A stretch of DNA of 64,000 nt, from positions 309,132,001 to 309,196,000 of the forward strand of contig CM097882.1 in assembly GCA_044892505.1 (NCBI GenBank), written 5' to 3'. Below, in pieces: positions 18,011 to 45,885 of this stretch. The stretch comes from Schmidtea nova (lineage: Eukaryota). Made by a program: the position numbers and the translations under genes. Each line of letters opens with the position of its first letter. Position 1 is the first letter of the stretch. The notes beneath the pieces are model-generated. The model saw only the letters and a program-made list of their open reading frames with translations, ran no database searches and was not told the origin of the DNA.

Positions 18011-18093
<83 letters not shown>

Positions 18094-18338
18094 TCATTAT
18101 ACAACGCAAAATATCATCACAGATATTATCATAAAATATTAAAAATATACAAAAGTTTATCGTACACACACTAGAAATACAGACAATAATAATCATTAAA
18201 AAAAAAATATTGAGTCATTGATGCGTCATAAAAAATGTTTAAGAAAAATAAAAAAAGATAACAAAAGATAACAAAAGATTTTGAAAAAAAATAATTAAAA
18301 AATGATATTAAGAAAATTGGAAAAAATTTGGAAAAAAT

Positions 18339-18820: not shown

Positions 18821-18891
<71 letters not shown>

Positions 18892-22180: not shown

Positions 22181-22211
22181 TGGCACTATTATATATGACA
22201 ATGATGATGAT

Positions 22212-22711
22212 AGTAGAGTAGGGGGAGCGCCCAAGAACAGGAACAGACCCCCCCTCCCCCCTAAAAAATTTTTTTTTTAACCCCCCCAAAAAAAAATTGT
22301 TTAAATGAAGTGAATTTTTTAAAATTTTTTATTTTGTTTAAATTAAGTGAATTTTTTATTTTTTATTTTGTTTAAATGAAGTGAATTTTTTTTTAATTTT
22401 AATTTTTTGTTTAAATGAAGTCAATTTAATTTATTATTTTNNNNNNNNNNNNNNNNNNNNNNNNNNNNNNNNNNNNNNNNNNNNNNNNNNNNNNNNNNNN
22501 NNNNNNNNNNNNNNNNNNNNNNNNNNNNNNNNNNNNNNNNNNNNNNNNNNNNNNNNNNNNNNNNNNNNNNNNNNNNNNNNNNNNNNNNNNNNNNNNNNNN
22601 NNNNNNNNNNNNNNNNNNNNNNNNNNNNNNNNNNNNNNNNNNNNNNNNNNNNNNNNNNNNNNNNNNNNNNNNNNNNTTAATATTTATTTATTTTTCGGTT
22701 CAGTGGGAAAA
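22212..22711. repeat. Left TIR of the Maverick (partner 37018-37517); contains a G/C-rich tip and a partly masked minisatellite
   Basis: 22212-22440 and 22677-22711 are reverse complements of 37294-37517 and ~37021-37057; mirror N-runs of 236 and 230 nt. Confidence 0.9.
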
Positions 22712-23023
22712 NNNNNNNNNNNNNNNNNNNNNNNNNNNNNNNNNNNNNNNNNNNNNNNNNNNNNNNNNNNNNNNNNNNNNNNNNNNNNNNNNNNNNNNNN
22801 NNNNNNNNNNNNNNNNNNNNNNNNNNNNNNNNNNNNNNNNNNNNNNNNNNNNNNNNNNNNNNNNNNNNNNNNNNNNNNNNNNNNNNNNNNNNNNNNNNNN
22901 NNNNNNNAATAATAAAAACTTAGAAAAAATTTTTAAAATAATAATACTAATATTTCATCACAGTGTAAATAATACAATAAAGTAGAAAATTAATAAAAAC
23001 AAAAAGAAATAAAATACAAATAT

Positions 23024-26000
23024 TTATTGAAATAAATCATCTTCATCTTCGTCATCTTCTTGAATATCTTCATCTTCGGTAATTGAATCCCCCATAACTG
23101 TAAAACTTTCTCTACAATGTCCATAAGCAATACTTTTATTTTTCTCAACCCAAAGTCTCTTATCATCGAGGTTAGTAAGTGCAATTTTTGAAAACTTATT
23201 AGTAAAAATTTGATGATTTTTACTCACAAATCGAGACTGCTCTACTGAAACTATAGTATTATTTCTATAACAATCAAGATAAGACCGATGCTTCAGTTTA
23301 GTATCTTTCAAACAGACGCCTTTAGCCTTTAAACATTCCTTATCACCTAAAAGACTATAACATTTAGGTCTAAGAAAAACCCATTCCTTATATTTATGAC
23401 CCTTATTTTCGTCTTTAAACTTTCCTATAACAGAATCAAGTTTTTTCGAATATAAAGAATGACTAGGGTCGTAATTCGATGTATCCAAAAGACAATCTCT
23501 AACCATCGCAGGTAACAGAATATCAAGCTTACAATTCTTAATCTCCAAGAAAAAAGAGTCAGTATCGCCTGCAACTATATTAATCTCACAGTTGAATTCA
23601 TTGCGATATTTTTGCAATTCTTCATACTGGAGTTGATACATTCTAAGTTTAGATAAATCCAGTACACTTTGGCCAATGTAGCTGGGTCTATCTAAACACA
23701 CAGAGTCCTTATTAAGCAAGACAGAAATTAGATCATCATCAATCCTATAAGTTTTTCTAAAGGTAGGTTTTGATGTATATGTAATCAGTTTTGATGCTGA
23801 ATTACAAAGTCGTAAATTGAGTCTTTTCTTAAGATTTTCGACAGTTTTTCCATAAAGACTATTATTTAAAAGTTTGTAATAGTTTTTATCTAAAACAAAC
23901 GATAAAGCTGCCCTAAGTTCAGTGTTTGTATCAATATATTTTTTAAAGATGGGTTTCTGTTTGTACTGAACAGCCCGATGAACTCGTGTTATTTTAACAC
24001 CCAAAGAAACAAAAAGCTTGAGAAGCCTCCAATGAACAACATAGTTGAACTTTGGATAATGCGTAAGCATTAACTTCTCAACTTTAGAATTGGGAGCACA
24101 CATTTTCTCTGCTGCAACCGGAAAGTCATTTAATTTATCGTGAATTTCAACTGGGATTACCAAGTCAACTTCAAATGTTACACCGATTGTTAAAAGTTCC
24201 AAGTCAGCATCCATCAAATTAATTAATTTATTTAATTTTTTCTCATCATTAATCCATTTAAATTTACCACAAGGTAATTTTTGGCTTAAGGCCCAACCGT
24301 ACAAATTATTAATATCGATGTAAAGTAGTTCAGTCGTTTCGGAGGATACTACATGATGCTTGTTGACAAATGTCAAACCACCACGGATCCCCCCTTCGAA
24401 AAAATTATACATCTCCATATCCTGGAGCAATTCAATAAGCCCACGACATACCTGGAATACCCAAGAAATTCAACGGTTCTAACCTATTATGAGAAATTGA
24501 CTTGGCTCTAAACTGTTGAAAGAAATCAGCAAGAAGAAAGACATCAAGTTTTAAGTATATCATCATATAGTCACAAAGAGTTTGACAATTAGTTTCCCTC
24601 CAAATAACTAATGCCTTGTCGTATTCAGCCTGCTTAACACCCTCCCAGATTGGTGGCAACTCATAAGTGTTGTTAAGAATTTCTAACGATGTTGCAAAAT
24701 CATAAGGAAAAATACCCTTACAGTCAACAATAGTCCCGGTGAATTCAGATCTAGTCAAAGGTAATGAAGTCAATGTTTTAACCGCATCATTTAAACTGGA
24801 GTTAATAAATTGACAAGAATCGATGAATTTAATTGTTAAATCGCCGACTCTTGCAGACAAAGTAAGGAATTTTTCACTCGTAGTTGGAATACATGATATA
24901 TTCCAAGTTGAAAAGTTTGCCAATCCATATTTAAGAATATGGTGCATGTCATACCCTTTTAAATTATGAAACACAACCGGTAGTTCCTTACGAATCTGTC
25001 TAGTAAGATTACATTTTAAGCAAGCAGCTCCCAAGAATTCACAAGTGTAGTGATCATGGTCTCTAACCGGATTAACTAAACGATTTTTACAAAGATAACA
25101 ATTTGTAGATGAGGCAAAAGATATTTTATTTTCAAATGTCATAATAAGTGGTTTTTTGAAATTGTTTTTATAAAAAGGAAAAACAATTTCTTCACCTATA
25201 TTATTAATTTCAGCAAGAAAATTAGTAACGCAATCAAGACCTAAGAAACTCTTGTAAATCTTTTCACCAGTGAAATTATTTACAAGTAAAAGACCGGCAG
25301 ATATTGGGACATGTCTTTGAAAGTACTTATCATCAGCAGGTAAGATTGCCTCAAAATCGGCGTAAACAACAAAAGGTGGAGTAATTGTTTTGCCCCAATT
25401 ACTTAATGTCAAATAAGGATTTTTAGGCAAAGTATATAGAGTTGTGCCTAATTGATTTTTAGAACACAACTCTTGATGACGAACAAAAGAATCTTGATAT
25501 CTAAACCCATTCAAGCATCGATGGCACCATATACTTTGAATACGAGTACCAGATATCGATTTATTGTCAAGATTTAAAAGCCTATCAAGATTGGTTACTG
25601 CTATATAATGAAAAGAGTCACCATTTTGTAAAAGAATCAAGTTAATAGGGATTCCGTCTACTACTTTCGACCTATGAATTATATCAATACACGGATGTTT
25701 GAAAACTTCAGGCTTAGTGTCTAGAATTCCAGATTCATCATATGAAAGTACATTAATCGCATATCCCGGGTTTTTAGCTTCAAACTTTGGGATATTGCAA
25801 AGACGCATAGGCAAATCAGAAGGACTAAAGTTAACATCAGAAAGATTGTAATTACTGATCCTATGTTTATTTTTACGACCAGATATCTCATCATATTTAA
25901 TAATTACCAAAACAGAATAGATAAAGCACAAGTCATCAGAATTCTGAACATTTACAACACAATGTTTTGATTTTAAAGATTCAGGAGTGTCAATACCACC

Positions 26001-26894
26001 GTAACCTATCAACCTACTAATTTCAGAAAATTTGGTTAATATGAAATGAATTTCATTAATTTTATTAATTATCCAGTTACTACCTCTATTATTAATTAAT
26101 GTAATTTTTTCATTAAGAATATTAATGCCATCGTCTATAAAGGTATCTGTGACACGTTTTGCAGAGTTAGAAATAACTATAGTTTGAAAAGCACCATCTT
26201 TTTCAAACTCAACTTCGATGCAAAATTGAATTTTAACCGTTCCCATGGTTTCAATTACATTATTTAATTTATTAATTAAATTATCAGGTACAAACATGCT
26301 TTTTAAATTCAAGTTAGTCACAATCATTTTCACTATAGCATGTGATTTATTTAAATCAAATTTAACAACAGGTAAAATGGAGCCACCAACCTGTACTTCA
26401 GGAACTAAAGAGTATTTATCGTCACAAATTTTATCAAAAGAACCACCAATTTGAATATTATCGATAGGATCAAAAGTATCTACAACCACAAAATCAGAAA
26501 GAATATTTAAATCAAGAATGTTATCAGGAATGATATCATTATCAAGAATGGTATCATTATCAAGAATTTTATCATCAAGAATGGTATCATTATCAAGAAT
26601 GTTATCATCATCATCAGAAATTACAACTATATCTGAAGGAACAACCGAATGAACAATTGAAGAAATATCATCAGAAAGAACTGACTTGTTAATTTTGATT
26701 GGGATTGGATTATTTTCATTACATTTTCTTTTAATCGGTAATTTAAAAATTGATTTTTTAGATGTTTTAAATTGATCTAAATGATCGCAATGAGTATTGT
26801 AAAAGTCAATATACGAAGAGGACGAAGTAGATTTGCAAAAAGGACAAATGTAGTAGGTTTTACAGTTATGAGGGTATGCATAATATCTTTCCAT
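23024..26894 (-). pseudogene. Protein-primed DNA polymerase B, split by one frameshifting deletion at ~24432
   Basis: VVYADFE (Exo I), VRDHDH..C..C insertion, FHNLKGYD, FIDS, YLKLDV, DINNLYG, KLLNNSLYGK, AGDTDS, RPKCY. The junction SWA|IELL lacks ~8 conserved residues. Confidence 0.93.
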
Positions 26895-27180
26895 TAATTC
26901 ATGGCATTTTACATCATGAATTGTGGAGTTGCAATATTTTTGATATATATTGCCTATAAATTTTAAAAAATAATATAAAAATAATGATCAAAATAATGAT
27001 AAAAATTATGATAAAAATATTATGATAAAAATTATGATAAAATATCAATGATGTATATCAAGTGTGTATACACACATTCAATTCAAAATATCGTAATATA
27101 TATTTATTGATTATGATTGGTCAAAATAATTTAAAAATTACTATATAAACGACTTATAAAATTAAAATAATCATTAAAAA

Positions 27181-27709
27181 ATGTATCAACTGAAAAGTAA
27201 GATTAATTAATTTTAAATGATTATTTTTAAATTTTCTTTTTCTAGAATCGAAAAGAATGTCAAAACAAGAAATAATGAAGATTATACTTGAGGAAAATCC
27301 TATTTCTTCATCTAATTTGGCATTGAATTCACCAGTTCAATTCATGCAATACTCGATGGAGTATTTGAAATATCCGATCAAATATTCATTTAAAGTAATT
27401 AATTAAAAATTATAAAAATCTAATTAATATTATTTACAGGAACCTGTTACATTGAAACAATGTCAATTCAATATTCAGGTTGGAAAAATCGGAGAAACTG
27501 ATAGAAAGAATCTATCAGAAATTTTAATGCTAATAAATAAAGATATTCAATTCAACGAGGAATTCACATATATGAACTGTAAAAAAGAAACAGATTTAGG
27601 CAAATTAGATGATAATTCAATGTATCAAATTCAAATTATCTTACAAGGATTTAAACAAACTGAAAACGTGATAAAACCTATTTGGAAAATTATCGAATTT
27701 CATGAATAA
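27181..27709 (+). CDS. Three-exon accessory gene (exons 27181-27196, 27246-27394, 27440-27709); putative OB-fold ssDNA-binding protein
   Basis: GT-AG introns of 49 and 45 nt give one continuous frame MYQLKKSKRMSKQE...WKIIEFHE. C-terminal S.Y.I.I.L.GF...P.WKI pattern resembles viral SSBs; homolog at 2308-2526. Confidence 0.65.
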
Positions 27710-27805
27710 ACTCTTGTTTAATTTGTTCTTTATTTTTCTTATTTACATTAAATATATTTTAAAAATAATATATAAATATATCATTTATAAAATATATTTA
27801 TTATA

Positions 27806-28090
27806 AAAATTAATTAAATTCATATAAAAATCTATCGATTATTAATTAAATTCATATAAAATCTATTAATTAAATCTATATAAAAAATCTAACAATTATT
27901 AATTAAATTCATATAAAAATCTATCGATTATTAATTAAATCTATATAAAGAAAAATCTATCAATTATTAATTAAATCTATATAAAAATCTATCAATTAAA
28001 TTAATTAAATCTATATAAAAAATCTAACAATTATTAATTAAATTCATATAAAGAAAAATCTATCAATTATTAATTAAATTCATATAAAAA
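27806..28090. repeat. Tandem array of ~9 units of ~24-36 bp (TAATTAAAT-C/TC-ATATAAAAATCT)
   Basis: Direct inspection; a second 33-34 bp array lies at ~28440-28610. Confidence 0.85.
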
Positions 28091-28113
28091 ATAAACATTT
28101 AATCAATATATAT

Positions 28114-28323
28114 TTAATCAATATATAAATACTTACATTTAAGTATCGATGGTTTAATTTTCTTTGACATAATATTGCTTGATTTAATTTTCATTGGTAT
28201 AACATTGTTTGGTATAATTTTCATTGACATAATATTGCTTGGTTCAATTTTCTTTGACATAATATTGCTTGGTTCAATTTTCTTTGACATAATATTGTTT
28301 GGTAAAATTTTCTTTGTTGTCAT
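28114..28323 (-). CDS. Small ORF made of 10-aa repeats (MSKKIEPSNI)
   Basis: 30-bp tandem repeats in frame; preceded by a 49-nt GTAAGT...TACAG putative 5'-UTR intron (28335-28383). Confidence 0.45.
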   Translation of the reverse strand: MTTKKILPNNIMSKKIEPSNIMSKKIEPSNIMSMKIIPNNVIPMKIKSSNIMSKKIKPSILKCKYLYID

Positions 28324-28712
28324 TATTTAAAAATCTGTAAAAAATAAATTTAAAAATATTCATAAAAAATTAAACTTACTTACTTAAGTTAGCTTGTTCG
28401 TAAAAATGTCGTTTATTTAAACGAAATTATTTTTAAATTAATGTAATTTAAAATTAATTAAATATTTTACAATATGTAATTTAAAATTAATTAAATATTT
28501 TTACAATATGTAATTTAAAATTAATTAAATATTTTTACAATATGTAATTTAAAATTAATTAAATATTTTTACAATATTAAAATTACTTAAATATTTTACA
28601 ATATGCAATTTTAAATTAATAAATTCAAACATAAAAATTCACTTTTGTATTAGCGAATACCATAAATAGAAAAAGTCGTTTTATAATAAAAGTCGTTTTA
28701 TAATAAAAAATT

Positions 28713-29092
28713 TTATTTCATATATTTTAGCCAAGCTAAACAATGTTGCCCACAGGTTTTTGTCATTGGATTTTGATATCGAATTCTGTTATATTCTATT
28801 GGTTTTAACATTGACGATAATTTTTTCAATAATATCGGTGGATAATAAAATCCCATTGGATCAAACACGTATATTTTATCGGGTTTATTATAAATTGCAA
28901 GCCAATGTTCACCTTTGAGGTTTGATGATTGAGTATTGACAATCAATGCTTTATTCACATCTATATACGGTATTTTATCTAGAGGAAAAACTCCTAGAAA
29001 TTCCGATCCAATCAATTTTCTAGCAATCTGATCTACCTGAATTGAACTAAAATCAATAAAATTTAATTAATAAAAAATAAATCTTACTTCAT
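28713..29092 (-). CDS. Adenain-like cysteine protease (2 exons: 29088-29092 and 28713-29046)
   Basis: FLGVFPLD, NTQ...GEHW, FDPMG, YQ...TCGQHC. A 41-nt intron gives the N-terminus MNSIQVDQIARKLIGSEF. Confidence 0.93.
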
Positions 29093-29153
29093 TTACTTTT
29101 TTAATTAATAAAAAAAAATAGTTTATATTAAACGAGTATTGTTTGAGCTCTGC

Positions 29154-30380
29154 TCAAACCAGTATTGTTCGATTAGCTGTAATTTGTAATTCCTTTTCAA
29201 AAACTCCATATACAATTACAGAAACTGATTCAGTCAATGGTGTACCAAATTTAATATCAAGTCTTAGATTACCTTGTTGTGGTAATTGACTTTGATTTAG
29301 GTCAAAATCTGGAGCCAAAACGAAGGTGAAAAAAGGATATTTACTTTTCCAATCTGCTAAAGTAATACCGCAATTCATACTCTTATTCAGGTAACCAAGG
29401 TTACGGACAATAGATTGCATATAACTAGTACTACAAATATCATTTTCAAAATCTTGAGAATATTTTTCACGATAATCACTTCCTTTCGATAAAGTTAATG
29501 ATTTGACATTAAAATGATCGTAAATAGAATAAGTTTCAGTAAAAGAACCACTATGTCTTTTATTTCCTTGAAATGCTACAAGAATAAAGTTTGGTAATCG
29601 TCTATCGCCAAAGATTTGTTCCTTATAAAATGAAGAAGAACCCATTGGCAATGAAAATTCTACAACTTCCTTATTTCTTATTGGATAAATTGCATTTCTT
29701 GTACCAAGTCCAATTTGATGCCCAGCATAAACTGATGGTTCTACTCGAACTCTTCTAACCATTAATTTTGCCTCTAATAATTCAATTATAGGTTCAATTT
29801 TTGTACATGTTAAACTATTGGATGGATTTGATCTCGTCAATTTAATTTGAACACTAACACCTGGTAATAAATACTTGGGCTGTTCCATGAAATCGAAATG
29901 TAATGGAGAACAAATTGAAAATGGTTTTGATTTTGCAATCCATGCTTTTCTAGTAAGATCATGGTCATTGTATCCCATTGGAGTTAAAGATGTGTGTTTT
30001 GTATCACTATTGTAGTTGAGAATAGTTTCAATCATGGCTTTGTGTGTAAATGTATCATTTCCTCCTTCAACTTTAGTAGAATTGAAAATTAATTCGGCTT
30101 CTTTAAAAAGAGTTTGGAAAAAGAAATTGTTGGGAGTAACATCAGCATCCAATCCTAAATTTTCACCCGATTTGTTTACAACTTTGACCTGAAGAGATAG
30201 TAAAATATCGTTCAAATCTAAATATTCAGTTTGAGATCCATTGATGTAAAATTGAATAGATGATGTCCCAGCATCTGTAATTGAATTTGTTGGGTAAATA
30301 TCTTCAAATGCACCATGTTCAATTACTGCTTGTGGAGATGGTCTATCAAAAACACATAATTCAGATTTTGCACTAATCAT
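29154..30380 (-). CDS. Major capsid protein (double jelly-roll), intact 408 aa
   Basis: Position between protease and penton; SEL.VF...Q, YLDL.D..L, KLTRS, P.FILVAF, FTFVL.PD, G.LRLDIKF are typical Polinton MCP motifs. Confidence 0.88.
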   Translation of the reverse strand: MISAKSELCVFDRPSPQAVIEHGAFEDIYPTNSITDAGTSSIQFYINGSQTEYLDLNDILLSLQVKVVNKSGENLGLDADVTPNNFFFQTLFKEAELIFNSTKVEGGNDTFTHKAMIETILNYNSDTKHTSLTPMGYNDHDLTRKAWIAKSKPFSICSPLHFDFMEQPKYLLPGVSVQIKLTRSNPSNSLTCTKIEPIIELLEAKLMVRRVRVEPSVYAGHQIGLGTRNAIYPIRNKEVVEFSLPMGSSSFYKEQIFGDRRLPNFILVAFQGNKRHSGSFTETYSIYDHFNVKSLTLSKGSDYREKYSQDFENDICSTSYMQSIVRNLGYLNKSMNCGITLADWKSKYPFFTFVLAPDFDLNQSQLPQQGNLRLDIKFGTPLTESVSVIVYGVFEKELQITANRTILV

Positions 30381-30784
30381 TTTTCAAAAATTGTTCCATA
30401 TCCTTTCATTCTTTTGTTTATATGTTTCTTCATATTTCTTTTTCGTTTAAGAATTCCGCCATTTTGTTTATTTTCAGTTTTATTTTCGTTAAACACATCA
30501 GTCACTTTACTAATTACTTGTGGTAAATGATGAATCACATCGGGCAATGAGTCTTTAATTTCAGAAATGACATTGGATTTTAGTGCAGGTAAAATCTTTG
30601 AATTATTATTTAACACATCATTGGCAGTTTTCATACCAAAATTTCCAATACGTCTAAGAATTGGTAATGCAAATCTACCTATCGTTTTCAACCAACCAGT
30701 TCCATATTGTTTACCTACAAAATACGGTAATTCTCCACCTGATTGGCTGTTGCTATAGAAACTGATAATATCTGGATTATTCAT
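30377..30784 (-). CDS. Conserved Maverick ORF upstream of MCP; putative virion core or membrane protein with QxGG/QxGxG motifs
   Basis: QSGG, QYGTG, an amphipathic WLKTIGRFALPILRRIG segment, QNGG and a basic tail. Confidence 0.7.
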   Translation of the reverse strand: MNNPDIISFYSNSQSGGELPYFVGKQYGTGWLKTIGRFALPILRRIGNFGMKTANDVLNNNSKILPALKSNVISEIKDSLPDVIHHLPQVISKVTDVFNENKTENKQNGGILKRKRNMKKHINKRMKGYGTIFEK

Positions 30785-31795
30785 TTATTTTACGGAAATG
30801 TAATGTCAAGTAAGTTTTGTCTTCTTTTGCAAATTTAACTATTTTTCCACTGTCATCACGAATATTGATTTCAATATTGTTTATATATGTGGAACTGACC
30901 GGTAAATACATTGGATTTTTCTCAACAATTTGAACCAAATCACCCTTTTTATGTTTTTCAACCCAAACACATTTCAATAGGGGAACTGACATGTCACCAA
31001 CAAGAATTGGTTGAATAATATTCGTATAGATGAACATTTGTTGATGAAGTTTTAAAACTTGTGGATAATATACGCCATCAATAATTTTGTCAAAGAATTC
31101 TTGTTCAACTAATCCTAATGAATTTGCTAAATTCCTACTAAATTTGACACTAGTTATATCATCTTCAAGAATTAATTTAATTAATTTTCCTTCTTTAATA
31201 TCAATCACTTTAAATGGATGTGGATAAAAAGTTTCAATTTGATCAGATAATTCAGTAATATTATTTATTATTAAATCGTCTTTGAAATTATCTGTGTATT
31301 CAACAGGAAAAGTATAAGTTATAGTAAATCGTATAGTATCATCAAGTTTTTTATTTTCATTTGCTGGAATTTTAATTTTGTTTAATTCATCATTAAATGT
31401 CACAGCTTTTTCTTGAAACCCTAATTTTTTAGCTTCATCAACACTATCAAATATTATTTGAAATATTATTTACAATTTACATTTAAAATATTGCCATCAA
31501 TATACATTAAATAATAATTAGAATCGTGACTTATATCATATTCTTTCTTTTGTTGGTTAAAATTGAAATATTCATAACTAGAATGTAATTCATTTCTAGT
31601 AAATTTTATACTTGAACTATTATAAAATGGAAATTCATTGTACACAAAAGTAAAATCCATAAGAGCAACTTCCCAACTACCATCCAAATAAATAGGGTTT
31701 TGATATTCAACATTGAATTTTCCAACTTTATTATTGGGATGTGTCAATGGACAAGAATTGCTTGGTAAATTAACATAAAAATCTTTTTTAATCAT
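30777..31795 (-). pseudogene. Minor capsid (penton) paralog 2, broken by a stop plus frameshift near 31450
   Basis: FYVNLPSN...WEVALMDF and QMFIYTNII...VGD...PLL...MYLPV...IEINIRDDSG...LTLHFRK, paralogous to 31788-32825. Confidence 0.85.
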
Positions 31796-32825
31796 TTATT
31801 TTACGAAAATGTAGAGTCAAATGAGTCTTTGTATCTTTTGAAAATTTAATTAATTTTCCACTGTCATCACGAATATTGATTTCAATGTTGTTTATAGTTG
31901 ATGTTGAAATCGGCAAATACATTGGATTCTTTATTTCAATTTGTACAACTTCGCCTTGGTCATATTTCTTGATCCAAATTGATTTAAGGAGGGGAACTCG
32001 TACATCTCCAACAGTCACTGGTTCGATAATGTTGCTGTAAATGAACATTTGCTGATGAAGTTGTAAAATTTTGGGGATTTTTACACCAATTATTTCGGTA
32101 TCAGTATATGTTTGTTTCTGTAGACTCAGAGATTTGGTTAAATTTGAATCAAAAGTAATTTTTGAAATATTATCCTGAAGAATAATTTTAACCAATTCAT
32201 TATTGACAAGTTTCATTTCTTTAAATGGAGATGGATTAATTTTCATTAAATATCCTTGTAATTCCGGTAATGACGTTATGAATAATTCATCTTGAAAATA
32301 ATAATTATTAACAGTTTTAATGTCATAATTTATTAAAATTCCAAATTGTTCAAGACTATTATCATTCGTGAATTTTGGTAATTTTAAACGACAATGGTCA
32401 TTTTCACTTGTAATTGATATATTTTCCAATCCAAAACTTTTTGCATGTTCAAGATCTGGAAATGTAATTTTAAATGGAACATGTGGGCAAACAATCACTA
32501 AATAATTATATTTTTCAATAAATACATCAGTGTCTGAACTAGGTTGAGAAACTATAACTTGAATTGTTTTATTTTGATTATTAATTCTCAAATAACTAAT
32601 TTCTTGAATTTCTCTTTTAGTTTCAATTTGAATAAAAGAATTACTATAATACGGAAACAAATTATACACAAAAGTAAAATCAATCAAAGCAACTTCCCAA
32701 TCGTCATTACTATTTAAATAAATCGGATTTTGAAATTCTACATTAAAATTACTAGCTTCATTATTAGGATAAATAAGAGGACATGCATTGCTAGGTAAAA
32801 TCATATAAAACTGGTTCTCTTTCAT
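31788..32825 (-). CDS. Minor capsid (penton) paralog 1, intact 345 aa
   Basis: FYMILPSN...WEVALIDF...MFIYSNII...VGDV.VPLL...YLPI...IEINIRDDSG...LTLHFR, the Polinton penton pattern. Confidence 0.88.
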   Translation of the reverse strand: MKENQFYMILPSNACPLIYPNNEASNFNVEFQNPIYLNSNDDWEVALIDFTFVYNLFPYYSNSFIQIETKREIQEISYLRINNQNKTIQVIVSQPSSDTDVFIEKYNYLVIVCPHVPFKITFPDLEHAKSFGLENISITSENDHCRLKLPKFTNDNSLEQFGILINYDIKTVNNYYFQDELFITSLPELQGYLMKINPSPFKEMKLVNNELVKIILQDNISKITFDSNLTKSLSLQKQTYTDTEIIGVKIPKILQLHQQMFIYSNIIEPVTVGDVRVPLLKSIWIKKYDQGEVVQIEIKNPMYLPISTSTINNIEINIRDDSGKLIKFSKDTKTHLTLHFRKIND

Positions 32826-32830
32826 AATAT

Positions 32831-33916
32831 TTATTTAATCAATTGTTTTTCAGATATCCAACTTGGAGTTTCATAGCCATGCCATTTAACGTAATATTGT
32901 TTATATTTCCCATCAGTTTTGGTTTTTAAAATCTTTTGAATTCTAAAAACTGTGGGAGCTGGAATAACTTGAAGTTCTTGTTCGTAGAATTTACCCTCGA
33001 TTACATTGTTTTCATGATCGGAAATAGTATACATGACAGGATTTTGATTAGTATCAACATTTGAGATTTGATATACTTCATCACTCCAATTACTATCAAA
33101 ATTTTTGATGAATGGAGAAGCACTAATTTTACTCATTCTCACATAATCGCCTACTTTATATTTCGGTTTTTTATTAATTGATTTTAATCTATCTTTTATC
33201 CATCCGTCAAAATTATTATTTGAATAAACATCGATAGGTTTCATTTTATTTAATCCCGAATGCGGTGATCGATTGTAACTGGAAATAATTTTCGGTAAAA
33301 CATTTATCCACGTTTTGTTACCTTGATACACAAAATACTTTTTCAAGCGATCTCTTAAAGTACGATTAAATCTTTCAACATGAGCAGCTTTGAATTGAGA
33401 AAATACAGAATAATGATTGATTCCTTTGATCACTTCTTTTACTTTGCTGTTATAAAACTCTTTTCCTAAATTAAAATTAATTAATTTTTAAAAATTTAAT
33501 TTATTACCCAAATCAGGTTGTAAATTACGTGGCTTCCCATCTTTAAATAAAGATTCAATAGCCTCAGCCATTTCATTAGCAGATTTAGTTTTTGTTGGAA
33601 TAGCTCGTGCATAACGGCTAAAAACATCAATACAAGTCAAAATATATTTGTAACCCTTGTTAATTTTAGAATAAGGAATCATTTCCATTAAATCCATTTG
33701 CCATAAATCGTTACCCCCAAAAGTTTTATATTTGCGTGTAGGAAATCTTTTCAACATTGGTTTATTTAAACTCTATGCCAATTGATCAGATAACCATTTC
33801 TGAGTTTCATTCTTTGAACTTTTTATTCTTTTTGCCAATTTTTTGACTGAACCAAAACCATCGGGATCTTTTGGGTTTGTCCATATCGTTTTTATATTCT
33901 TCATGATTTTCTTCAT
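32831..33916 (-). pseudogene. Retroviral-like integrase with C-terminal chromodomain; 42-nt intron (33466-33507) and premature TAG (33773-33775)
   Basis: WQMDL, CIDVFSR, spliced QPDLG|KEFYN, VERFNRTL, YYVKWHGY...SW. The relative at 53620 reads QLAYSLNKP where this copy has TAG. Confidence 0.92.
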
Positions 33917-33978
33917 TAATACAACAATTTGTTAAAATATTTAAATCTATATTATGTTTATTCGGTTCAGAAATTTTA

Positions 33979-34308
33979 TTACCCATTTCTTAAAGATGAG
34001 ATTGCGCTTATTGCTGATAATACTATTGGAATTAATGTACCGAGAAACCCACCCTTTTGTTTATATATTATTTTTCGCATAAGATTTCTATTTTTGGTAT
34101 TCACTAATGATAAAAGTGAATTTTTATGTTTTTGTAGTTCAATTTTCTTTGATCTACTAATATTTACATTACCATGAACAATATTAAAAACGACTTCAAG
34201 TAAATCATCAATAACAAAGGGTGGGAAAGCTTGTAAAATTATCATTCGCTTATTTGTTGGAGCTTTAACCAAAGCATTAAAATACGGTAAACTACGTTCA
34301 AATTTCAT
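33979..34308 (-). CDS. Conserved Maverick ORF with a C-terminal QKGGFL amphipathic helix
   Basis: NIVHGNV.IS...KQKGGFLGTLIPIVLSAI; homolog at 53771-54064 (KQQGGF). Confidence 0.75.
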   Translation of the reverse strand: MKFERSLPYFNALVKAPTNKRMIILQAFPPFVIDDLLEVVFNIVHGNVNISRSKKIELQKHKNSLLSLVNTKNRNLMRKIIYKQKGGFLGTLIPIVLSAISAISSLRNG

Positions 34309-34338
34309 GATTAAAATTTTTGTATATATTTATTTCGT

Positions 34339-34524
34339 TTATAATTTTATCCACTTCTTAACTTGTTTCTTTCTTTTACCAATCTTTTTGGTAACTTTTT
34401 TAACTAATTTAGATTTTCGATCAACTTTTTTAAGAAGTTTTCGATCAACTTTTTTAATCAGTTTTTGATCAGCTTTTTGAACAGCTTCTTTATTTAACTT
34501 GACAATTACTTTTTTAAATGACAT
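34339..34524 (-). CDS. Small Lys-rich basic protein (possible DNA-condensing protein)
   Basis: 61 aa, very Lys-rich, tightly packed between core genes; a Lys-rich duplicated region occupies the equivalent place at 54123-54604. Confidence 0.5.
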   Translation of the reverse strand: MSFKKVIVKLNKEAVQKADQKLIKKVDRKLLKKVDRKSKLVKKVTKKIGKRKKQVKKWIKL

Positions 34525-34545
34525 TATTATTTCATTTATTTGTTT

Positions 34546-35168
34546 TCAATTTTGTTTATAAACCGTGACTCCATTTTCGTTAAATATATCCGTTCGGATA
34601 CGTAAATCATCAGGACATTGTTGAGTAAAATCAAAGAATAAATATCCATGAGGAACTTTAGTAGCATCTTGAAATGAATTAATTAAGAATTTCCTATCAT
34701 TAGGGTAAGCTTGTCTTGCTAGAAAATCAATAATTGTAGCATCTCTTGGGTTTCTGAATATAACCAAGTATTGAACATTTAAATTACGAGTTCTGTGACT
34801 ACCACCTTGATGAAATAAATTTTGAGTAATGAAAATTACAGTAACTCCTAAATGTCTACTAATTTTTGTGAATAAATTATTAAAATCTTTTCTTTATTTG
34901 CTTCTTGGTACAAATCATCGATAATTATAACATCGCCTTGTCGTAATCTAGATGACCAGTTTTTATCAAACCCTTTTATAATTGTCATTTTTAATTTACA
35001 GAATTGATCTTGAGTCAGTCCATGTTCTTCATCAGCTCCTCTATGCCAGTAAATTTTATTGAATTTAGATTTAAACATTTTTGATTGCAACAATTTACAT
35101 ACAAATAATGTTTTTCCACTACCACTTGGGCCCACTATTTGATAAACTGCATCATTTCTTAATTCCAT
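34546..35168 (-). pseudogene. A32/FtsK-like packaging ATPase with a 1-bp frameshift near 34890
   Basis: GPSGSGKT (Walker A), IIIDDL (Walker B), then in another frame LFTKISRH...IFITQNLF...RNLNVQYLVIFRNPRD. Confidence 0.93.
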
Positions 35169-35227
35169 TTTTATTTAATTAATTATTAATTAATTTAATA
35201 TTGTTTATATTTATTCAATTTATAAAA

Positions 35228-35710
35228 ATGATAAGTAATATTAATTATATGGGCAAGTGTTTAGTTCCAAACATGTTATTTCCTGTTGGGAAACCCCAGC
35301 AAGTTATAGATAGGAGCGGGAAGTACCCTATTTTATTTTTCAGATCGGGGAAATGCCGTGTAATGGGTTGTAAGCAACCGTTAAAACCAGATGATTTGAA
35401 ATATAAAATTTCAGATTTAAAAATTCAATCGATCACTATAACATTGGATATGGGTAAATCCATAAATTTATACGAATTGCAAAATAAAACAGAGTGCTGG
35501 TACGAACCCGAAATATTTCCAGCTTTGAGATTAATAAATTATAACCCAATTTGCATTAATATTTTTTCAAGTGGAAAAGTTGTAATATTAGGAATTAAAA
35601 CATTGGATTATTTTAATCAAGTAAATGAAATTAAAAATTATATTAATTCATTAATTAATAATGAATTAATTGATGAAAAATATCTCGATTTATTATTTAA
35701 TTTTGTTTAA
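35228..35710 (+). CDS. TATA-binding protein (TBP)-like, 160 aa
   Basis: Two TBP repeats: ISNIN..LFP..ILFFRSGKCRVMG and KIQSITITLDMGKSINLYEL..YEPEIFPAL..INIFSSGKVVILGIK. Confidence 0.85.
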   Translation: MISNINYMGKCLVPNMLFPVGKPQQVIDRSGKYPILFFRSGKCRVMGCKQPLKPDDLKYKISDLKIQSITITLDMGKSINLYELQNKTECWYEPEIFPALRLINYNPICINIFSSGKVVILGIKTLDYFNQVNEIKNYINSLINNELIDEKYLDLLFNFV

Positions 35711-35745
35711 ATACATTGTTATTTTACAAATCCATATTTTTGAAA

Positions 35746-36131
35746 ATGTCTAAAAGTAAGTATTATTTTTAATTAACTATATTATTAATATTTTTTATTT
35801 AGCTTATTTATTTGAAGTGGTCCTGAAGAAAATTCAAGAATTATATCCAAAAATAAAAGATTCTTTGGATTATTGTGCGCCAGAGTTATTGGTTCATAAG
35901 ATATATAAGCTTACTGGGATCAATATCGAACAATTGCTCGAGATTCACTACGATATGGTGCTAGGAGCTGGAGTCAAATGCGTTGAAAATTGCATAGTTT
36001 GCAATGATTCACTAAGAGTATCCTGTGTAAACGGATGTGCATGCTGCCATGATTTTAAAAGAGATCATTCGGTGCATATCTTAATGTCAGAAATGCGTAA
36101 AGCATATTATAACGACATTTATAATTTATAA
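35746..36131 (+). CDS. Cys/His-rich 'YCAPEL' accessory protein (2 exons: 35746-35755 and 35803-36131)
   Basis: 47-nt GTAAGT...TTAG intron in frame; CVENCIVC...CVNGCACCHD; homologs at 3222 and 38780. Confidence 0.7.
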
Positions 36132-36429
36132 TAAAGTTTTGTGATTTAGTTGTTCTTTATTTTTATTTCAAAGTTTTGTGATTTAGTTGTTCTTTATTAT
36201 NNNNNNNNNNNNNNNNNNNNNNNNNNNNNNNNNNNNNNNNNNNNNNNNNNNNNNNNNNNNNNNNNNNNNNNNNNNNNNNNNNNNNNNNNNNNNNNNNNNN
36301 NNNNNNNNNNNNNNNNNNNNNNNNNNNNNNNNNNNNNNNNNNNNNNNNNNNNNNNNNNNNNNNNNNNNNNNNNNNNNNNNNNNNNNNNNNNNNNNNNNNN
36401 NNNNNNNNNNNNNNNNNNNNNNNNNNNNN

Positions 36430-36563
36430 ACTATAGATCAAATTTTTTTATAAACAATAACACAATATTTCGGCACAGCCTTTATCAAGTGTGTAAATAC
36501 ACACTTGATAAAGGCTGTGCCGAAATATTGTGTTATTGTTTATAAAAAAATTTGATCTATAGT
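36430..36563. repeat. Perfect 134-bp palindrome (66-bp arms, 2-nt loop)
   Basis: ACTATAGATC...GTGTGTA-AA-TACACAC...GATCTATAGT; no mismatch found by eye. Confidence 0.92.
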
Positions 36564-37847
36564 CATTATGAGAATTATTGATAATAATAATAAAAAAAGA
36601 TCAAAGGTNNNNNNNNNNNNNNNNNNNNNNNNNNNNNNNNNNNNNNNNNNNNNNNNNNNNNNNNNNNNNNNNNNNNNNNNNNNNNNNNNNNNNNNNNNNN
36701 NNNNNNNNNNNNNNNNNNNNNNNNNNNNNNNNNNNNNNNNNNNNNNNNNNNNNNNNNNNNNNNNNNNNNNNNNNNNNNNNNNNNNNNNNNNNNNNNNNNN
36801 NNNNNNNNNNNNNNNNNNNNNNNNNNNNNNNNNNNNNNNNNNNNNNNNNNNNNNNNNNNNNNNNNNNNNNNNNNNNNNNNNNNNNNNNNNNNNNNNNNNN
36901 NNNNNNNNNNNNNNNNNNNNNNNNNNNNNNNNNNNNNNNNNNNNNNNNNNNNNNNNNNNNNNNNNNNNNNNNNNNNNNNNNNNNNNNNNNNNNNNNNNNN
37001 NNNNNNNNNNNNNNNNNGTTATTTTTCCCACTGAACCGAAAAATAAATAAATATTAATTAAAATNNNNNNNNNNNNNNNNNNNNNNNNNNNNNNNNNNNN
37101 NNNNNNNNNNNNNNNNNNNNNNNNNNNNNNNNNNNNNNNNNNNNNNNNNNNNNNNNNNNNNNNNNNNNNNNNNNNNNNNNNNNNNNNNNNNNNNNNNNNN
37201 NNNNNNNNNNNNNNNNNNNNNNNNNNNNNNNNNNNNNNNNNNNNNNNNNNNNNNNNNNNNNNNNNNNNNNNNNNNNNNNNNNNNNNNNNNNNNAAAATAA
37301 TAAATTAAATTGACTTCATTTAAACAAAAAATTAAAATTAAAAAAATTCACTTCATTTAAACAAAATAAAAAAAATTCACTTAATTTAAACAAAATAAAA
37401 AATTTAAAAAATTCACTTCATTTAAACAAAAAAATTTTTTTTGGGGGGGGGTAAAAAAAAATTTTTAGGGGGGAGGGGGGGTCTGTTCCTGTTCTTGGGC
37501 GCTCCCCCTACTCTACTGATGATAGACTGATACGAAGAGATGTCACCATGAAGAACGAGATGCCTTTGGACTTATTTGTCCATCCAGATTTCCCAGATAA
37601 AGAAGACGCAATGTTATTTTAATATATTTTGTTGAAAAATCAAAAATTTTGTTTTTAATTTCATTCATTATGAATTGTTCGTTATTATATGTTAAATATG
37701 ACTTGTTGGTCATTTTTGTATTAGGTAGTATAGAGTAAGATTTTTCTTAAATATGATTTGTTCACCATTTTCTTAAATTTGGCTTGTTTGTCATTTTTAT
37801 TACATAGTATATGGTTAACGTTTTGATCAGTATATCTTGTTGATTAT

Positions 37848-44462: not shown

Positions 44463-44873
44463 TGTGGGATGTTTAAAAATACTCTAAAGATTTTTATAAA
44501 AGTATTTTAATAAAAAAAGTATTTCGCAAAGAAAACATCTCGTTTAAAATAAAAATAATTATCAGTAAAGATTTTAATATTTAAAATCAAATTTAAAATG
44601 TACTGTCTTAAATAAAAGTCTTAATAAAGTTTTTATTAAATATATAGGTTTATTAAAATATAGCTGAAATTAATTAAAAATCGTATGTTGAATTTATGTA
44701 TGAATGTTCTGTATGAAAATTCTGTCAAGAAAATTTACATATTTATTTGAATCTCCTAACGTTGTTTAAATAATTGTGGTAAAAAATACAATTTTGAAAT
44801 TTTGTTAATTTAATTAATTATTTAATGATTGACGCAATTAATACCCGATGTTCGGGAAAAGAAGATACTAACA
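44463..44873 (+). mobile_element. Solo LTR of the Gypsy-2 family
   Basis: Reverse complement of the LTRs at 58254-58665 and 63039-63448; 5-bp TSD ATGAG. Confidence 0.95.
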
Positions 44874-45885
44874 ATGAGCAAATGCACTATTACTCAGTGA
44901 AAGAGACAAGAAAATTAGCTCTCACTTTATACAACGTTTTTTAACTGTTGAAATGCAAAATCAACATGTGCATCACTGCGAAGTAAAAATCTTCAGATTT
45001 TGAATGTTGTTAGTGAGTTTTTAGTATAATATGGATGAGGCTCCACTTTCACTATATGTTCTTCAGTTTAAACTGGAATCTGAAGAGTGGAAACAATATG
45101 TTGAGGTCTGTTCTAAGAAGATTAGGCCATCAACAAGTCACCGAAAAGCGCTCATGCTCATTGTGTTTTGGAATCCAAATATCATTATTTTGGCTGATCT
45201 TTCAGAAATTGGGGTTTAAATTAACAGCTCCTATTACTCCAAACTTGTAGAAAAAACACGGAAACTGCAAAGAAAAAGCAGAGTGGATGTATTCTATTAC
45301 TTACACGATAACGCTCCTATTCACACAAATACAGTTTAATGGGCAAAATTAAGAGTTGTGGAATTATAGTGCTTCCCATCTTCTCTACATTCCCGATTTG
45401 GCTCCATAGAACTTCTATTTGTTTATTTACCCTAAGGTATCCTTGCAAGTCCAGCAGTTTGCCACAAAAGACGACTTAAAAGATGTAATGGAGCATTTTA
45501 CGGGTGAAGTGTCAGAATTTCTTCAAAATCGTCTTTCAAACTCTGGATTCACGCTGAAAAGCATGTGTTGATGCAAATGAAAATTATTTTGAGAAATAAA
45601 CTCTATATGACTTGCTTATTGTCAGTACAAAATATATTTGTGTTCATTTCTCATTCCTCACTACTTATTGGACGCACCGCGTTTCATTAACAATGTTTTT
45701 TGATCCCTCTCAAATTATTTTTCATAATTTTGACTATTTCTTTAACGTTTGAATTTTATAATATCTTACGTTTTTCTAACATGTAAACCCCTTTAAAAGA
45801 AAATATAAAATTTGGTTCTTTTAATTTTTATTTGTCAATAGCGTACATCATTTTGATAAACATTAATGAGCTTCGTTGAGGACTT

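What the first reader, a model, noticed from the sequence alone, without database searches (positions are those of the whole stretch)
35228..35710. A Maverick/Polinton that encodes its own TATA-binding-protein-like factor
Seen: an intact 160-aa ORF inside the TIRs, divergent from the ATPase, with both TBP repeats. Repeat 2 is close to canonical (KIQS..D....INL..L...YEPEIFPAL...IFSSGKVVILG vs TBP KIQN..D....IRL..L...YEPELFPGL...IFVSGKVVLTG). Repeat 1 is shortened but keeps LFP and FFRSGK, so candidates for all four DNA-intercalating Phe residues are present. Known: TBP-like genes occur in giant DNA viruses but are not part of the standard Maverick core, and Mavericks lack an RNA polymerase. Inference: a captured, divergent TBP that redirects host Pol II to element promoters, or acts as a decoy. 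It is intact although pPolB, integrase and ATPase in this copy each carry a lesion.
Basis: partly seen in the sequence, partly recalled or inferred. Interest (0 to 1): 0.9.

Follow-up and report, generated by a model that had tools for sequence, protein, structure and literature searches.

The report
Maverick element encoding a short TBP
A virus-like transposon sitting in an animal-type genome carries an intact gene for a cut-down TATA-binding protein that belongs to a large, essentially undescribed family, and it probably helps the element steer the host's transcription machinery to its own genes.

Summary
The ORF is real: 35228-35710 (+), 160 aa, no internal stop. It matches Pfam TBP well above the cutoff (61.4 vs 22.9 bits, E 7.4e-17). 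It lies inside a 15,306-bp Maverick/Polinton-type element (22212-37517) with long TIRs and a 6-bp target duplication. It is 59 bp from the ATPase gene and transcribed divergently from it. pPolB, integrase and ATPase are all broken.

The claim of "both repeats, four Phe" is only partly right. Repeat 2 is complete. Of repeat 1, only strands S3-S5 align, helix H2 is deleted and residues 1-24 are unalignable. Three Phe are near-invariant in 82 relatives. The fourth candidate (F18) probably sits at a conserved Tyr position instead.

The gene is not a one-off. At least 66 cluster representatives share the same short architecture, all from metagenome or run assemblies. One 16.2-kb contig seems to hold both a TBP-like gene and a relative of the element's 408-aa capsid candidate. 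The gene shows no special likeness to animal TBPs.

The only precedent I found is a "TBP" label in figure legends of the adintovirus paper.

Function (an element-specific promoter factor using host Pol II) is inferred, not shown.

The parts
22212..37517 (.). Whole Maverick/Polinton-type element, 15,306 bp
   Evidence: TIR ends and identical 6-bp flanks. Core gene content.
22206..22211 (.). Left copy of the 6-bp target-site duplication (GATGAT)
37518..37523 (.). Right copy of the 6-bp target-site duplication (GATGAT)
22212..22907 (+). Left terminal inverted repeat, starting AGTAGAGTAGG; partly N-masked
   Evidence: Readable outer ~230 nt are 92.7% identical to the right arm.
36827..37517 (-). 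Right terminal inverted repeat; partly N-masked
23024..26894 (-). [quoted passage not shown]
   Evidence: PF03175 at 66.3 bits against a cutoff of 25.8. Break count. No OTU domain detected in residues ~280-460.
28713..29015 (-). Adenovirus-type cysteine protease ORF (100 aa as listed)
   Evidence: PF00770 Peptidase_C5 at 25.6 bits against a cutoff of 21.3
29154..30380 (-). 408-aa ORF, the major capsid protein candidate by position only; one uninterrupted ORF
   Evidence: 99 relatives, mostly about 405-415 aa with 100% query coverage. No Pfam hit. 0 PDB hits with profile A4 at E<=10. The capsid label is unverified.
30377..30784 (-). 135-aa ORF, function unknown
   Evidence: only sub-threshold Pfam hits
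30777..31795 (-). Shorter paralogue of the 345-aa ORF, in two ORFs (one interruption); function unknown
   Evidence: Shared N- and C-terminal stretches are visible in the translations. No Pfam hit.
31788..32825 (-). 345-aa ORF, function unknown
   Evidence: 0 Pfam families
32831..33916 (-). Retroviral-type integrase gene with a C-terminal chromodomain-like end, broken by 2 in-frame stops
   Evidence: rve at 35.9 bits against a cutoff of 32.6. rve_3 and Chromo are below their cutoffs. Break count.
33979..34308 (-). 109-aa ORF with a weak adenovirus protein X-like C-terminus
   Evidence: PF05829 at 25.6 bits against a cutoff of 25
34339..34524 (-). 61-aa lysine-rich ORF, function unknown
   Evidence: translation
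34546..35168 (-). P-loop packaging-type ATPase gene, broken: 2 pieces in different frames, so at least 1 frameshift
   Evidence: PF00910 at 28.1 bits. Pox_A32 at 17.6 bits is below its cutoff of 22.8. Break count.
35169..35227 (.). 59-bp AT-rich spacer between the divergent ATPase and TBP-like genes; holds a palindromic TTTATAAA just before the TBP-like ATG
35228..35710 (+). TBP-like gene, 160 aa plus stop, intact
35300..35377 (+). Residues 25-50, the remnant of TBP repeat 1 (strands S3-S5, includes F38 and M46)
   Evidence: Profile-profile alignment. Pfam on the N-half. N-half against C-half gives score 27.5, against shuffles with mean 10.8 and maximum 17.8, n=40.
35414..35662 (+). Residues 63-145, the complete TBP repeat 2 (includes YEPEIFPAL and NIFSSGK)
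35663..35707 (+). Residues 146-160, a C-terminal tail not shared by any of the 26 closest relatives
   Evidence: alignment A1
35817..36131 (+). 104-aa Cys-rich ORF downstream of the TBP-like gene on the same strand; function unknown and start unresolved (the listed start is GTG)
   Evidence: 0 Pfam families. Best PDB hit has E 1.1.

Best explanation
The ORF encodes a genuine but cut-down member of the TATA-binding protein family. It is carried as an accessory gene by a Maverick/Polinton-type (adintovirus-like) element.

The protein keeps a complete second TBP repeat. That repeat includes both DNA-kinking Phe residues and the acidic E-P-E-(I/L)-F stirrup, which in cellular TBP contacts TFIIB (residue roles are recalled from the TBP structural literature). 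The first repeat is reduced to about 50 residues. Its S3-S5 strands and its second Phe are kept, helix H2 is deleted, and the S1-H1-S2 part is replaced by 24 conserved but unalignable residues.

Two polar positions that are invariant or nearly invariant in canonical TBPs are replaced across the family (Asn to Ser68, Thr to Leu121). I recall these as minor-groove contacts.

Inferred mechanism: the element has no RNA polymerase. The protein binds an AT-rich, TATA-like but non-canonical promoter element in the element's very short intergenic regions. Through its repeat-2 stirrup it recruits host TFIIB and RNA polymerase II. This would give the element promoter recognition of its own, as the herpesvirus TBP mimics do for late genes.

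Shown: homology, architecture, family conservation, and location inside the element. Inferred: DNA binding, the target motif, the TFIIB/Pol II partnership, and any benefit to the element.
For: Homology: Pfam TBP at 61.4 bits against a cutoff of 22.9. The family profile against PDB gives 35 hits at E<=0.001, all cellular TBPs or TBP fusions, best 1.5e-22.

Architecture: one collinear profile-profile alignment with canonical TBPs, 128 columns, probability 99.6%, E 3.7e-24.

Constraint across 82 aligned family members: F38 81/81, F97 81/82, F113 82/82, M46 82/82, N111 82/82, E93 78/82, E95 80/82, R44 81/82. The short N-half is about as conserved as the full repeat (mean identity to the window protein 0.38 against 0.42).

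Family size: 26 of 59 candidates at E<=0.001. 88 of 3,485 candidates at E<=1e-10. In the exhaustive search, 55 representatives fall at E<=1e-30, and by my hand count 66 of the 150 listed match the profile from position <=5 to >=128 in one stretch.

Part of the element: the gene is inside the TIRs and target duplication, 59 bp from the ATPase start, and has the element's composition.

Linkage elsewhere: TBP-like P0028 (ENA) and P0237, a relative of the 408-aa ORF (ENA), both report a contig of exactly 16,200 bp.

A TATA-like word, TTATAAA, occurs upstream of 4 of 7 non-coat genes. That is 3 independent sites against about 0.5 expected.

Precedent: a 'TBP' label on MELD virus maps. Functional analogue: herpesvirus TBP mimics that bind TATT and recruit Pol II (PMC4893493, PMC7498053, PMC12529657; search listing and abstract starts only).
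Against: The first Phe of repeat 1 is probably lost, and residues 1-24 cannot be aligned. A complete ten-stranded saddle is therefore not demonstrated.

The changed Asn and Thr positions could mean weak or no TATA binding.

The upstream motif is weak evidence in DNA of 27% GC.

Linkage rests on one contig-length match. 4 of the 5 family-type TBP contigs >=10 kb have no same-length partner on the capsid-candidate side, and 25 of the 26 capsid-candidate contigs >=10 kb have none on the TBP side. The gene therefore looks accessory rather than universal, although the lists are incomplete.

This copy is in a dead element and has a unique 15-residue tail.

None of the three other Maverick remnants in the window has a TBP-like gene, but only one of them reaches as far as the ATPase.
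Confidence: 0.5

Rival explanations
1. Decoy or repressor. The protein keeps the TFIIB-contact stirrup or the DNA face but cannot build a productive complex. It would then titrate host TFIIB, or occupy TATA boxes. The effect would be either to damp host transcription or to keep the element quiet.
For: The stirrup E-P-E-(I/L)-F is conserved (78/82, 72/82, 80/82 and 81/82 for E93, P94, E95 and F97). Meanwhile repeat 1 has lost helix H2, and its first 24 residues are unalignable. In cellular TBP, by recall, that side of the protein is where TFIIA and several regulators bind.
Against: Three kinking Phe residues and the whole N-half are strongly conserved. That suggests real DNA engagement rather than simple titration. 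No data separate this reading from the activator reading.
Confidence: 0.15
2. Architectural DNA bender. The TBP fold is used not for transcription but to bend AT-rich terminal DNA during protein-primed replication, integration or packaging.
For: The gene lies next to the TIR and the packaging ATPase. The TIRs and spacers are extremely AT-rich with homopolymer runs. The canonical Asn and Thr base-contact positions are replaced.
Against: The best-conserved surface outside the sheet is the TFIIB-type stirrup, which has no obvious role in replication. I know of no precedent, and none came up.
Confidence: 0.12
3. Factor for another virus's polymerase. The element would behave like a virophage-type parasite of a large cytoplasmic DNA virus, and its TBP-like protein would work with that virus's RNA polymerase. 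By recall, giant-virus TBP-like proteins work with their own polymerases in this way.
For: Intergenic regions are very short and AT-rich. Polinton-like viruses associated with entomopoxviruses exist (PMC11296320, title and abstract start).
Against: That paper has 0 occurrences of TATA, TBP, promoter or transcription factor. This element has a retroviral-type integrase, TIRs and a target duplication in a nuclear genome. No viral protein came back among the 35 PDB hits.
Confidence: 0.06
4. Passenger. A host TBP-like sequence was picked up once by this copy and has no role for the element.
For: The gene lies in an accessory region. It is absent from the three remnants in the window. 25 of 26 long capsid-candidate contigs have no length-matched TBP contig.
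Against: The same odd short architecture recurs in at least 66 representatives of 50%-identity clusters, with near-invariant functional positions. There is no special similarity to animal TBPs. Composition matches the element. One 16.2-kb contig is shared with a capsid-candidate relative.
Confidence: 0.05

Closest known systems
Cellular TATA-binding protein (archaeal and eukaryotic TBP, Pfam PF00352)
   Same: There is clear sequence homology over a full repeat, including the Y-E-P-E-x-F-P stirrup and the F-x-S-G-K hairpin. Strands S3-S5 of repeat 1 are collinear with canonical TBP.
   Different: The protein is about 150-160 aa rather than about 180 aa of core. Helix H2 of repeat 1 is deleted, and the S1-H1-S2 part of repeat 1 is replaced by 24 unalignable residues. 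The first Phe of repeat 1 is probably absent. The canonical invariant Asn of repeat 2 is Ser in 77/82 family members, and the near-invariant Thr is Leu or another residue. Scores against archaeal NCBIfam TBP models are far below their cutoffs, at 44.9 against 278.
'TBP' gene label on MELD viruses with adintovirus-like PolB (Starrett et al. 2021, PMC8502044 Fig. 5 legend; preprint 10.1101/697771)
   Same: It is a TBP-similar gene on a midsize linear dsDNA virus or element with an adintovirus-type PolB.
   Different: It appears only as a legend label, in the section on non-animal datasets, and is not discussed. Figures and supplements are not visible to me, so I cannot say which genome carries it or whether it belongs to the same short family. 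Here the gene sits in an integrated element flanked by a target duplication, in an animal-type genome.
Beta- and gamma-herpesvirus TBP mimics (KSHV ORF24, EBV BcRF1, HCMV UL87)
   Same: In function they are the nearest model. A nuclear DNA virus without its own RNA polymerase encodes a TBP-like promoter-recognition factor that binds a non-canonical TATT box and brings in host Pol II (abstract starts of PMC7498053, PMC12529657 and PMC8360532).
   Different: They are much larger proteins, and their TBP likeness is structural mimicry. None came back as a hit to this protein or its family profile. Membership was not tested and is not claimed.
TBP-like proteins of giant DNA viruses (I had in mind African swine fever virus pB263R and mimivirus TBP-like; names recalled)
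   Same: They are virus-encoded TBP homologues.
   Different: Those viruses carry their own RNA polymerase, and this element does not. Mirusvirus-like elements of a green alga also sporadically carry TBP genes (PMC10675990, passage read).
Animal TBP paralogues (TRF2/TBPL1 and similar; recalled)
   Same: They are divergent TBP-family members with changed DNA-contact residues.
   Different: Those keep two full repeats and are host genes. No such protein appeared among the 35 PDB hits. This family is intronless, short, and found on metagenome contigs.

Membership tests
TBP family (PF00352) | Significant match to the TBP repeat profile above the curated cutoff | tested here: met
   61.4 bits against a cutoff of 22.9, E 7.4e-17. 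The family profile against PDB TBPs reaches 1.5e-22.
TBP family (PF00352) | Two complete tandem repeats (S1-H1-S2-S3-S4-S5-H2, twice) | tested here: not met
   Only repeat 2 is complete. Repeat 1 aligns over S3-S5 only, with about 13 columns deleted at H2 and residues 1-24 unaligned.
TBP family (PF00352) | Four DNA-kinking Phe residues (role recalled) | tested here: inconclusive
   Three align with canonical invariant Phe positions and are kept in 81/81, 81/82 and 82/82 relatives. F18 (65/82) lies outside any significant alignment and, by spacing, falls at the conserved Tyr position.
TBP family (PF00352) | Acidic repeat-2 stirrup that contacts TFIIB/TFB (role recalled) | tested here: met
   Y92-E93-P94-E95-I96-F97-P98 aligns with the canonical Y-E-P-E-x-F-P. 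Family shares are 78/82, 72/82, 80/82 and 81/82 for E93, P94, E95 and F97. This is a sequence-level result only.
TBP family (PF00352) | Saddle fold and TATA-box binding | not testable with these tools
No binding data exist.
Maverick/Polinton (Polintoviricetes, adintovirus-like) | Long terminal inverted repeats and a 6-bp target-site duplication | tested here: met
   The TIRs span about 690 nt and are partly N-masked. The readable outer ~230 nt are 92.7% identical. GATGAT flanks both ends.
Maverick/Polinton (Polintoviricetes, adintovirus-like) | [quoted passage not shown] | tested here: met
   PF03175 at 66.3 bits against a cutoff of 25.8. The gene is broken.
Maverick/Polinton (Polintoviricetes, adintovirus-like) | Retroviral-type (rve) integrase, with a chromodomain in adintoviruses | tested here: met
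   rve at 35.9 bits against a cutoff of 32.6. Chromo at 20.7 is below its cutoff of 25.1. The gene is broken.
Maverick/Polinton (Polintoviricetes, adintovirus-like) | Adenovirus-type cysteine protease | tested here: met
   PF00770 at 25.6 bits against a cutoff of 21.3.
Maverick/Polinton (Polintoviricetes, adintovirus-like) | A32/FtsK-type packaging ATPase | tested here: inconclusive
   A P-loop NTPase is present (PF00910 at 28.1 bits). Pox_A32 at 17.6 is below its cutoff of 22.8.
Maverick/Polinton (Polintoviricetes, adintovirus-like) | Double jelly-roll major capsid protein and penton protein | tested here: inconclusive
   The 408-aa ORF has 99 full-length relatives but no Pfam hit and 0 PDB hits with its profile.
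Maverick/Polinton (Polintoviricetes, adintovirus-like) | OTU-like domain at the PolB N-terminus (adintovirus hallmark according to 10.1101/2024.03.25.586562, passage read) | tested here: inconclusive
   There is no OTU family at E<=5 in PolB residues ~280-460 or in the whole 820-aa piece at E<=0.01. A divergent domain could be missed.
Herpesvirus vTBP mimics and giant-virus TBP-like proteins | Sequence or fold relationship to those viral proteins | not tested
   None came back among the PDB hits. Fetching such comparators is barred, and no fold search was possible.

The most novel reading that the evidence does not exclude
A large, so far undescribed family of minimal 'one-and-a-half-repeat' TBPs is a recurrent accessory gene of animal Mavericks/adintoviruses. 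These proteins keep the TFIIB-contact stirrup and three kinking Phe residues but have lost both helices of repeat 1. The family would give these polymerase-less viruses a private promoter-recognition factor with altered sequence preference. In other words, a self-contained transcription switch like the herpesvirus late-gene system, but built from a true TBP homologue.
Probability: 0.35. Interest if true: 0.8.

Novelty: new variant of a known kind. Interest (0 to 1): 0.62.

Why it matters
Mavericks/Polintons are thought to depend wholly on host transcription. A conserved TBP variant encoded by the element would mean that some of them carry their own promoter-recognition factor. That bears on how these elements escape silencing, on how they time their gene expression, and on how DNA viruses repeatedly acquire control of Pol II.

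For TBP biology, a natural family that has shed most of repeat 1 yet keeps that half as conserved as the other tests which parts of the saddle are needed. The family is large: 55 representatives of 50%-identity clusters fall at E<=1e-30. It carries only automatic names in public data.

Tried and rejected
No model and no fold search followed.
- A second TBP-like copy in the window: none. The best other tblastn hit has E 0.16 and lies on the opposite strand of the gene itself.
- Rfam scan of the window: 0 matches.
- Capsid identity of the 408-aa ORF: no Pfam hit and 0 PDB hits with a 34-sequence profile.
- OTU domain in PolB: not detected.
- Downstream ORF104: no Pfam hit. The best PDB hit has E 1.1.
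- Homology of residues 1-24 to S1...S2 of canonical repeat 1: score 7.5 over 5 columns, reached by 29 of 60 shuffles. Rejected as not shown.
- Global N-half against C-half alignment: score 9.9, not significant.
- Promoter motif search: only TTATAAA, which is weak.
- Literature: searches found no text on a TBP gene in Mavericks/Polintons beyond the Starrett legends. Papers checked for TBP/TATA with 0 relevant hits: PMC8097293, 10.1101/2024.03.25.586562, 10.64898/2026.06.19.733378, PMC11296320 and PMC12220804 (reference list only). Figures and supplements were not visible and may name the TBP-bearing genomes.
- The recent-host-capture reading was rejected.
Full report
**The observation**

Its TBP homology is not a matter of chance. 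Pfam PF00352 scores 61.4 bits against a curated cutoff of 22.9 (E 7.4e-17). All 35 PDB sequences matched are cellular TBPs or TBP fusions, the best being 1mp9_A at 1.3e-12. I recall the top chains as archaeal TBPs, and 3eik and 4wzs as a microsporidian one. The organism names come from memory, not from a call.

**The element**

Inverted repeats begin at 22212 and 37517 with the same AGTAGAGTAGG motif, and both ends are flanked by GATGAT. The element is therefore 15,306 bp long with a 6-bp target-site duplication.

Much of both TIR arms is N-masked. I did not fill these stretches or look them up. The '100%' arm is largely N against N, and the readable outer ~230 nt are 92.7% identical.

On the minus strand the element holds:
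- a protein-primed PolB (PF03175, 66.3 bits),
- an adenovirus-type protease (25.6 against a cutoff of 21.3),
- an rve integrase (35.9 against 32.6) with a sub-threshold chromodomain,
- a P-loop ATPase.

A 408-aa ORF is the capsid candidate by position. It is full length relative to 99 relatives. It has no Pfam hit and no PDB match, so that label is unverified.

[quoted passage not shown] The TBP-like gene and a 104-aa Cys-rich ORF form such an accessory block next to the right TIR. They are transcribed divergently from the ATPase across a 59-bp spacer.

**The surroundings**

The rest of the window is rich in transposons:
- two Ty3/gypsy-type elements,
- a Tc1/mariner transposase,
- a hAT/DUF4371 transposase,
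- a sperm-tail PG-repeat exon.

GC content is about 28%. This looks like an invertebrate-type animal genome, not a human one. I could not name the species.

**Lesions**

Counts only:
- integrase: 2 in-frame stops;
- pPolB: 2 pieces in different frames;
- ATPase: 2 pieces in different frames;
- TBP-like gene: none.

This contrast is not evidence of selection in this copy. With at least 4 breaks in about 9.1 kb of ORFs, a 483-nt gene is expected to be unbroken about 80% of the time (my arithmetic). The 408-, 345- and 109-aa ORFs are unbroken too. The window protein also has a 15-residue C-terminal tail that none of its 26 closest relatives shares.

**Architecture of the protein**

HMMER aligns only residues ~59-145 to TBPs, and it aligns that stretch to both repeats of each TBP. 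For eukaryotic TBPs the C-terminal repeat scores better, at 45 against 25 bits for the microsporidian chain.

The N-terminal 57 residues alone give a sub-threshold Pfam match (13.1 bits, E 0.091) over residues 32-51. Compared as profiles, the family's N-half matches its own C-half over 14 columns at the F-x-S-G-K...G-x-K hairpin. The score is 27.5, against 40 column shuffles with mean 10.8, SD 2.4 and maximum 17.8.

The decisive test was the family profile (82 sequences) against a profile of 11 canonical two-repeat TBPs taken from the lower ranks. It gave one collinear alignment of 128 columns, with probability 99.6% and E 3.7e-24. In that alignment:
- residues 25-50 lie on S3-S5 of repeat 1;
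- about 13 columns are missing where helix H2 of repeat 1 belongs;
- repeat 2 follows in full, to residue 146;
- residues 1-24 are not aligned.

Tested on their own, residues 1-24 match nothing: score 7.5, reached by 29 of 60 shuffles. They are nonetheless conserved (N4 77/82, N6 79/82).

One relative, P0152, has a longer first repeat and looks intermediate.

So 'repeat 1 is shortened' is right, but 'both repeats' overstates it.

**The Phe residues and other contact positions**

F38, F97 and F113 align with Phe positions that are invariant in the canonical set. They are kept in 81/81, 81/82 and 82/82 family members.

It lies five residues before P23 (79/81). That is the spacing between the conserved Tyr and the first Phe in canonical TBPs. 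It therefore more likely stands at the Tyr position, and the first Phe of repeat 1 is probably gone. This is an inference from spacing, outside the significant alignment.

The canonical invariant Asn of repeat 2 is Ser68 here, as in 77/82 members. The near-invariant Thr is Leu121, as in 44/82. I recall these two positions as minor-groove contacts, so the sequence preference may differ from a classic TATA box.

The Y-E-P-E-I-F-P stirrup of repeat 2 is well conserved. I recall it as the TFIIB/TFB contact.

**The family**

The first search gave 26 hits among 59 candidates, of 100-181 aa and 41-72% identity. A profile search gave 88 hits at E<=1e-10 among 3,485 candidates.

The exhaustive search of 1.84 billion representatives gave 3,412 hits at E<=1e-3, 764 at E<=1e-10 and 55 at E<=1e-30. 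By my hand count, 66 of the 150 listed match the profile from position <=5 to >=128 in one stretch. Canonical TBPs appear lower in the list, as two-stretch hits.

For alignment A3 I used 19 of the 26 hits and 62 of the 150 representatives, chosen for near-full-length matches. I dropped short or N-terminally truncated rows.

All members whose source I saw come from ENA, JGI/IMG, MGnify or Logan assemblies, plus two records sourced from NCBI. The only names are JGI's automatic 'TATA-box binding protein' and MGnify's 'FL=1'. The window's own protein is not in the collection.

The N-half is about as conserved as the C-half (0.38 against 0.42 mean identity to the window protein). That argues against its being a decaying relic.

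**Is the gene linked to Mavericks elsewhere?**

As a substitute I compared source and contig length between the TBP-like proteins and the relatives of the 408-aa ORF. On the TBP side I used plus 49 cluster members. On the other side I used plus 81 cluster members.

There was one same-source exact match: 16,200 bp, with ENA as the source on both sides (P0028 and P0237).

The other 4 of the 5 family-type TBP contigs >=10 kb (15,141, 18,985, 14,369 and 32,480 bp) have no partner. Likewise, 25 of the 26 capsid-candidate contigs >=10 kb have none. The lists are incomplete, but this looks like an accessory gene present in a subset of elements, not a core gene.

Within the window, three remnants of related elements (67-72% DNA identity) carry no TBP-like sequence. 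Only one of them extends as far as the ATPase.

**Origin**

The family profile scores archaeal, microsporidian, yeast, plant and human TBPs within a narrow band of 83 to 53 bits, and animal TBPs are not favoured. It falls far below the archaeal NCBIfam cutoffs. The gene's GC and GC3 (0.267 and 0.242) sit within the range of the element's other genes and differ from the neighbouring transposons. A recent capture from the host is therefore not supported. An old, fast-evolving lineage carried by these elements fits better.

**Mechanism**

Homology, architecture, conservation and location are shown. Everything beyond that is inference.

My best reading is that the element has no RNA polymerase and uses this protein as its own promoter-recognition factor. 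The protein would sit on a TATA-like word in the very short spacers and recruit host TFIIB and Pol II through the conserved stirrup.

TTATAAA occurs upstream of 4 of 7 non-coat genes. That is 3 independent sites against about 0.5 expected. In DNA this AT-rich, this is weak evidence.

The closest working model is the herpesvirus TBP mimic (ORF24, BcRF1, UL87), which binds TATT and recruits Pol II. I saw only listings and abstract starts for those papers.

The rivals are a decoy or repressor, an architectural DNA bender for replication or integration, a factor for a co-infecting large virus's polymerase, and a passenger gene.

**Prior knowledge**

Six searches found only one mention linking TBP to these elements. 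It is in figure legends of Starrett et al. [quoted passage not shown] Both occur in the section on non-animal datasets and are not discussed in the text. The figures and supplements were not visible to me.

A green-alga paper notes sporadic TBP genes in mirusvirus-like elements.

I found no description of the short architecture. My searches did not target that point specifically, and subscription journals are not covered.

**Verdict**

This is a real and interesting finding. It is a genuine, reduced TBP homologue carried as an accessory gene by a Maverick-type element, and it represents a large family that has gone unnoticed.

Noticed in passing
window 35817-36131 (+): A 104-aa Cys-rich ORF lies directly downstream of the TBP-like gene on the same strand. 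The two form a two-gene accessory block. It has no Pfam or PDB match, and its true start is unresolved (the listed start is GTG).
   Followed up: partly
window 30777-31795 and 31788-32825 (-): Two paralogous genes of unknown function lie side by side. One is an intact 345-aa ORF and the other is shorter and in two ORFs. Their N- and C-terminal stretches are clearly alike in the translations.
   Followed up: no
window 5007-7119, 18657-19236, 51865-54853: Three remnants of related Maverick-type elements, 67-72% identical in DNA to parts of this element. None includes a TBP-like region.
   Followed up: partly
window 35663-35707: The window's TBP-like protein ends in a 15-residue tail that none of its 26 closest relatives has.
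   Followed up: no
protein P0152: A 184-aa relative carries the family's hairpin signature but has a much longer first repeat. It may be an intermediate between canonical TBPs and the short family.
   Followed up: no
window 34339-34524 (-): A 61-aa ORF of which about a third is lysine, lying between the ATPase and the 109-aa ORF. It could be a DNA-condensing core protein.
   Followed up: no
window 19477-21343 (-): A hAT-type transposase (DUF4371 plus the hAT dimerisation domain) in two overlapping ORFs, just left of the element.
   Followed up: partly
window 7993-12986 and 58661-63108 (-): Two Ty3/gypsy-type retroelements with long gag and pol ORFs. Repeats at 44589-44874, 58253-58538 and 63121-63321 are 91-92% alike in inverted orientation and may be LTR copies.
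   Followed up: no
window 13167-13453 and 16980-18892: Clusters of short repeats that match each other in inverted orientation many times over (pairs I12-I25). This suggests minisatellite-like arrays.
   Followed up: no
window 46309-46782 (-) and 49983-50930 (-): A sperm-tail PG-rich repeat (SHIPPO) exon and a Tc1/mariner transposase. The first is the only candidate host gene seen in the window.
   Followed up: partly
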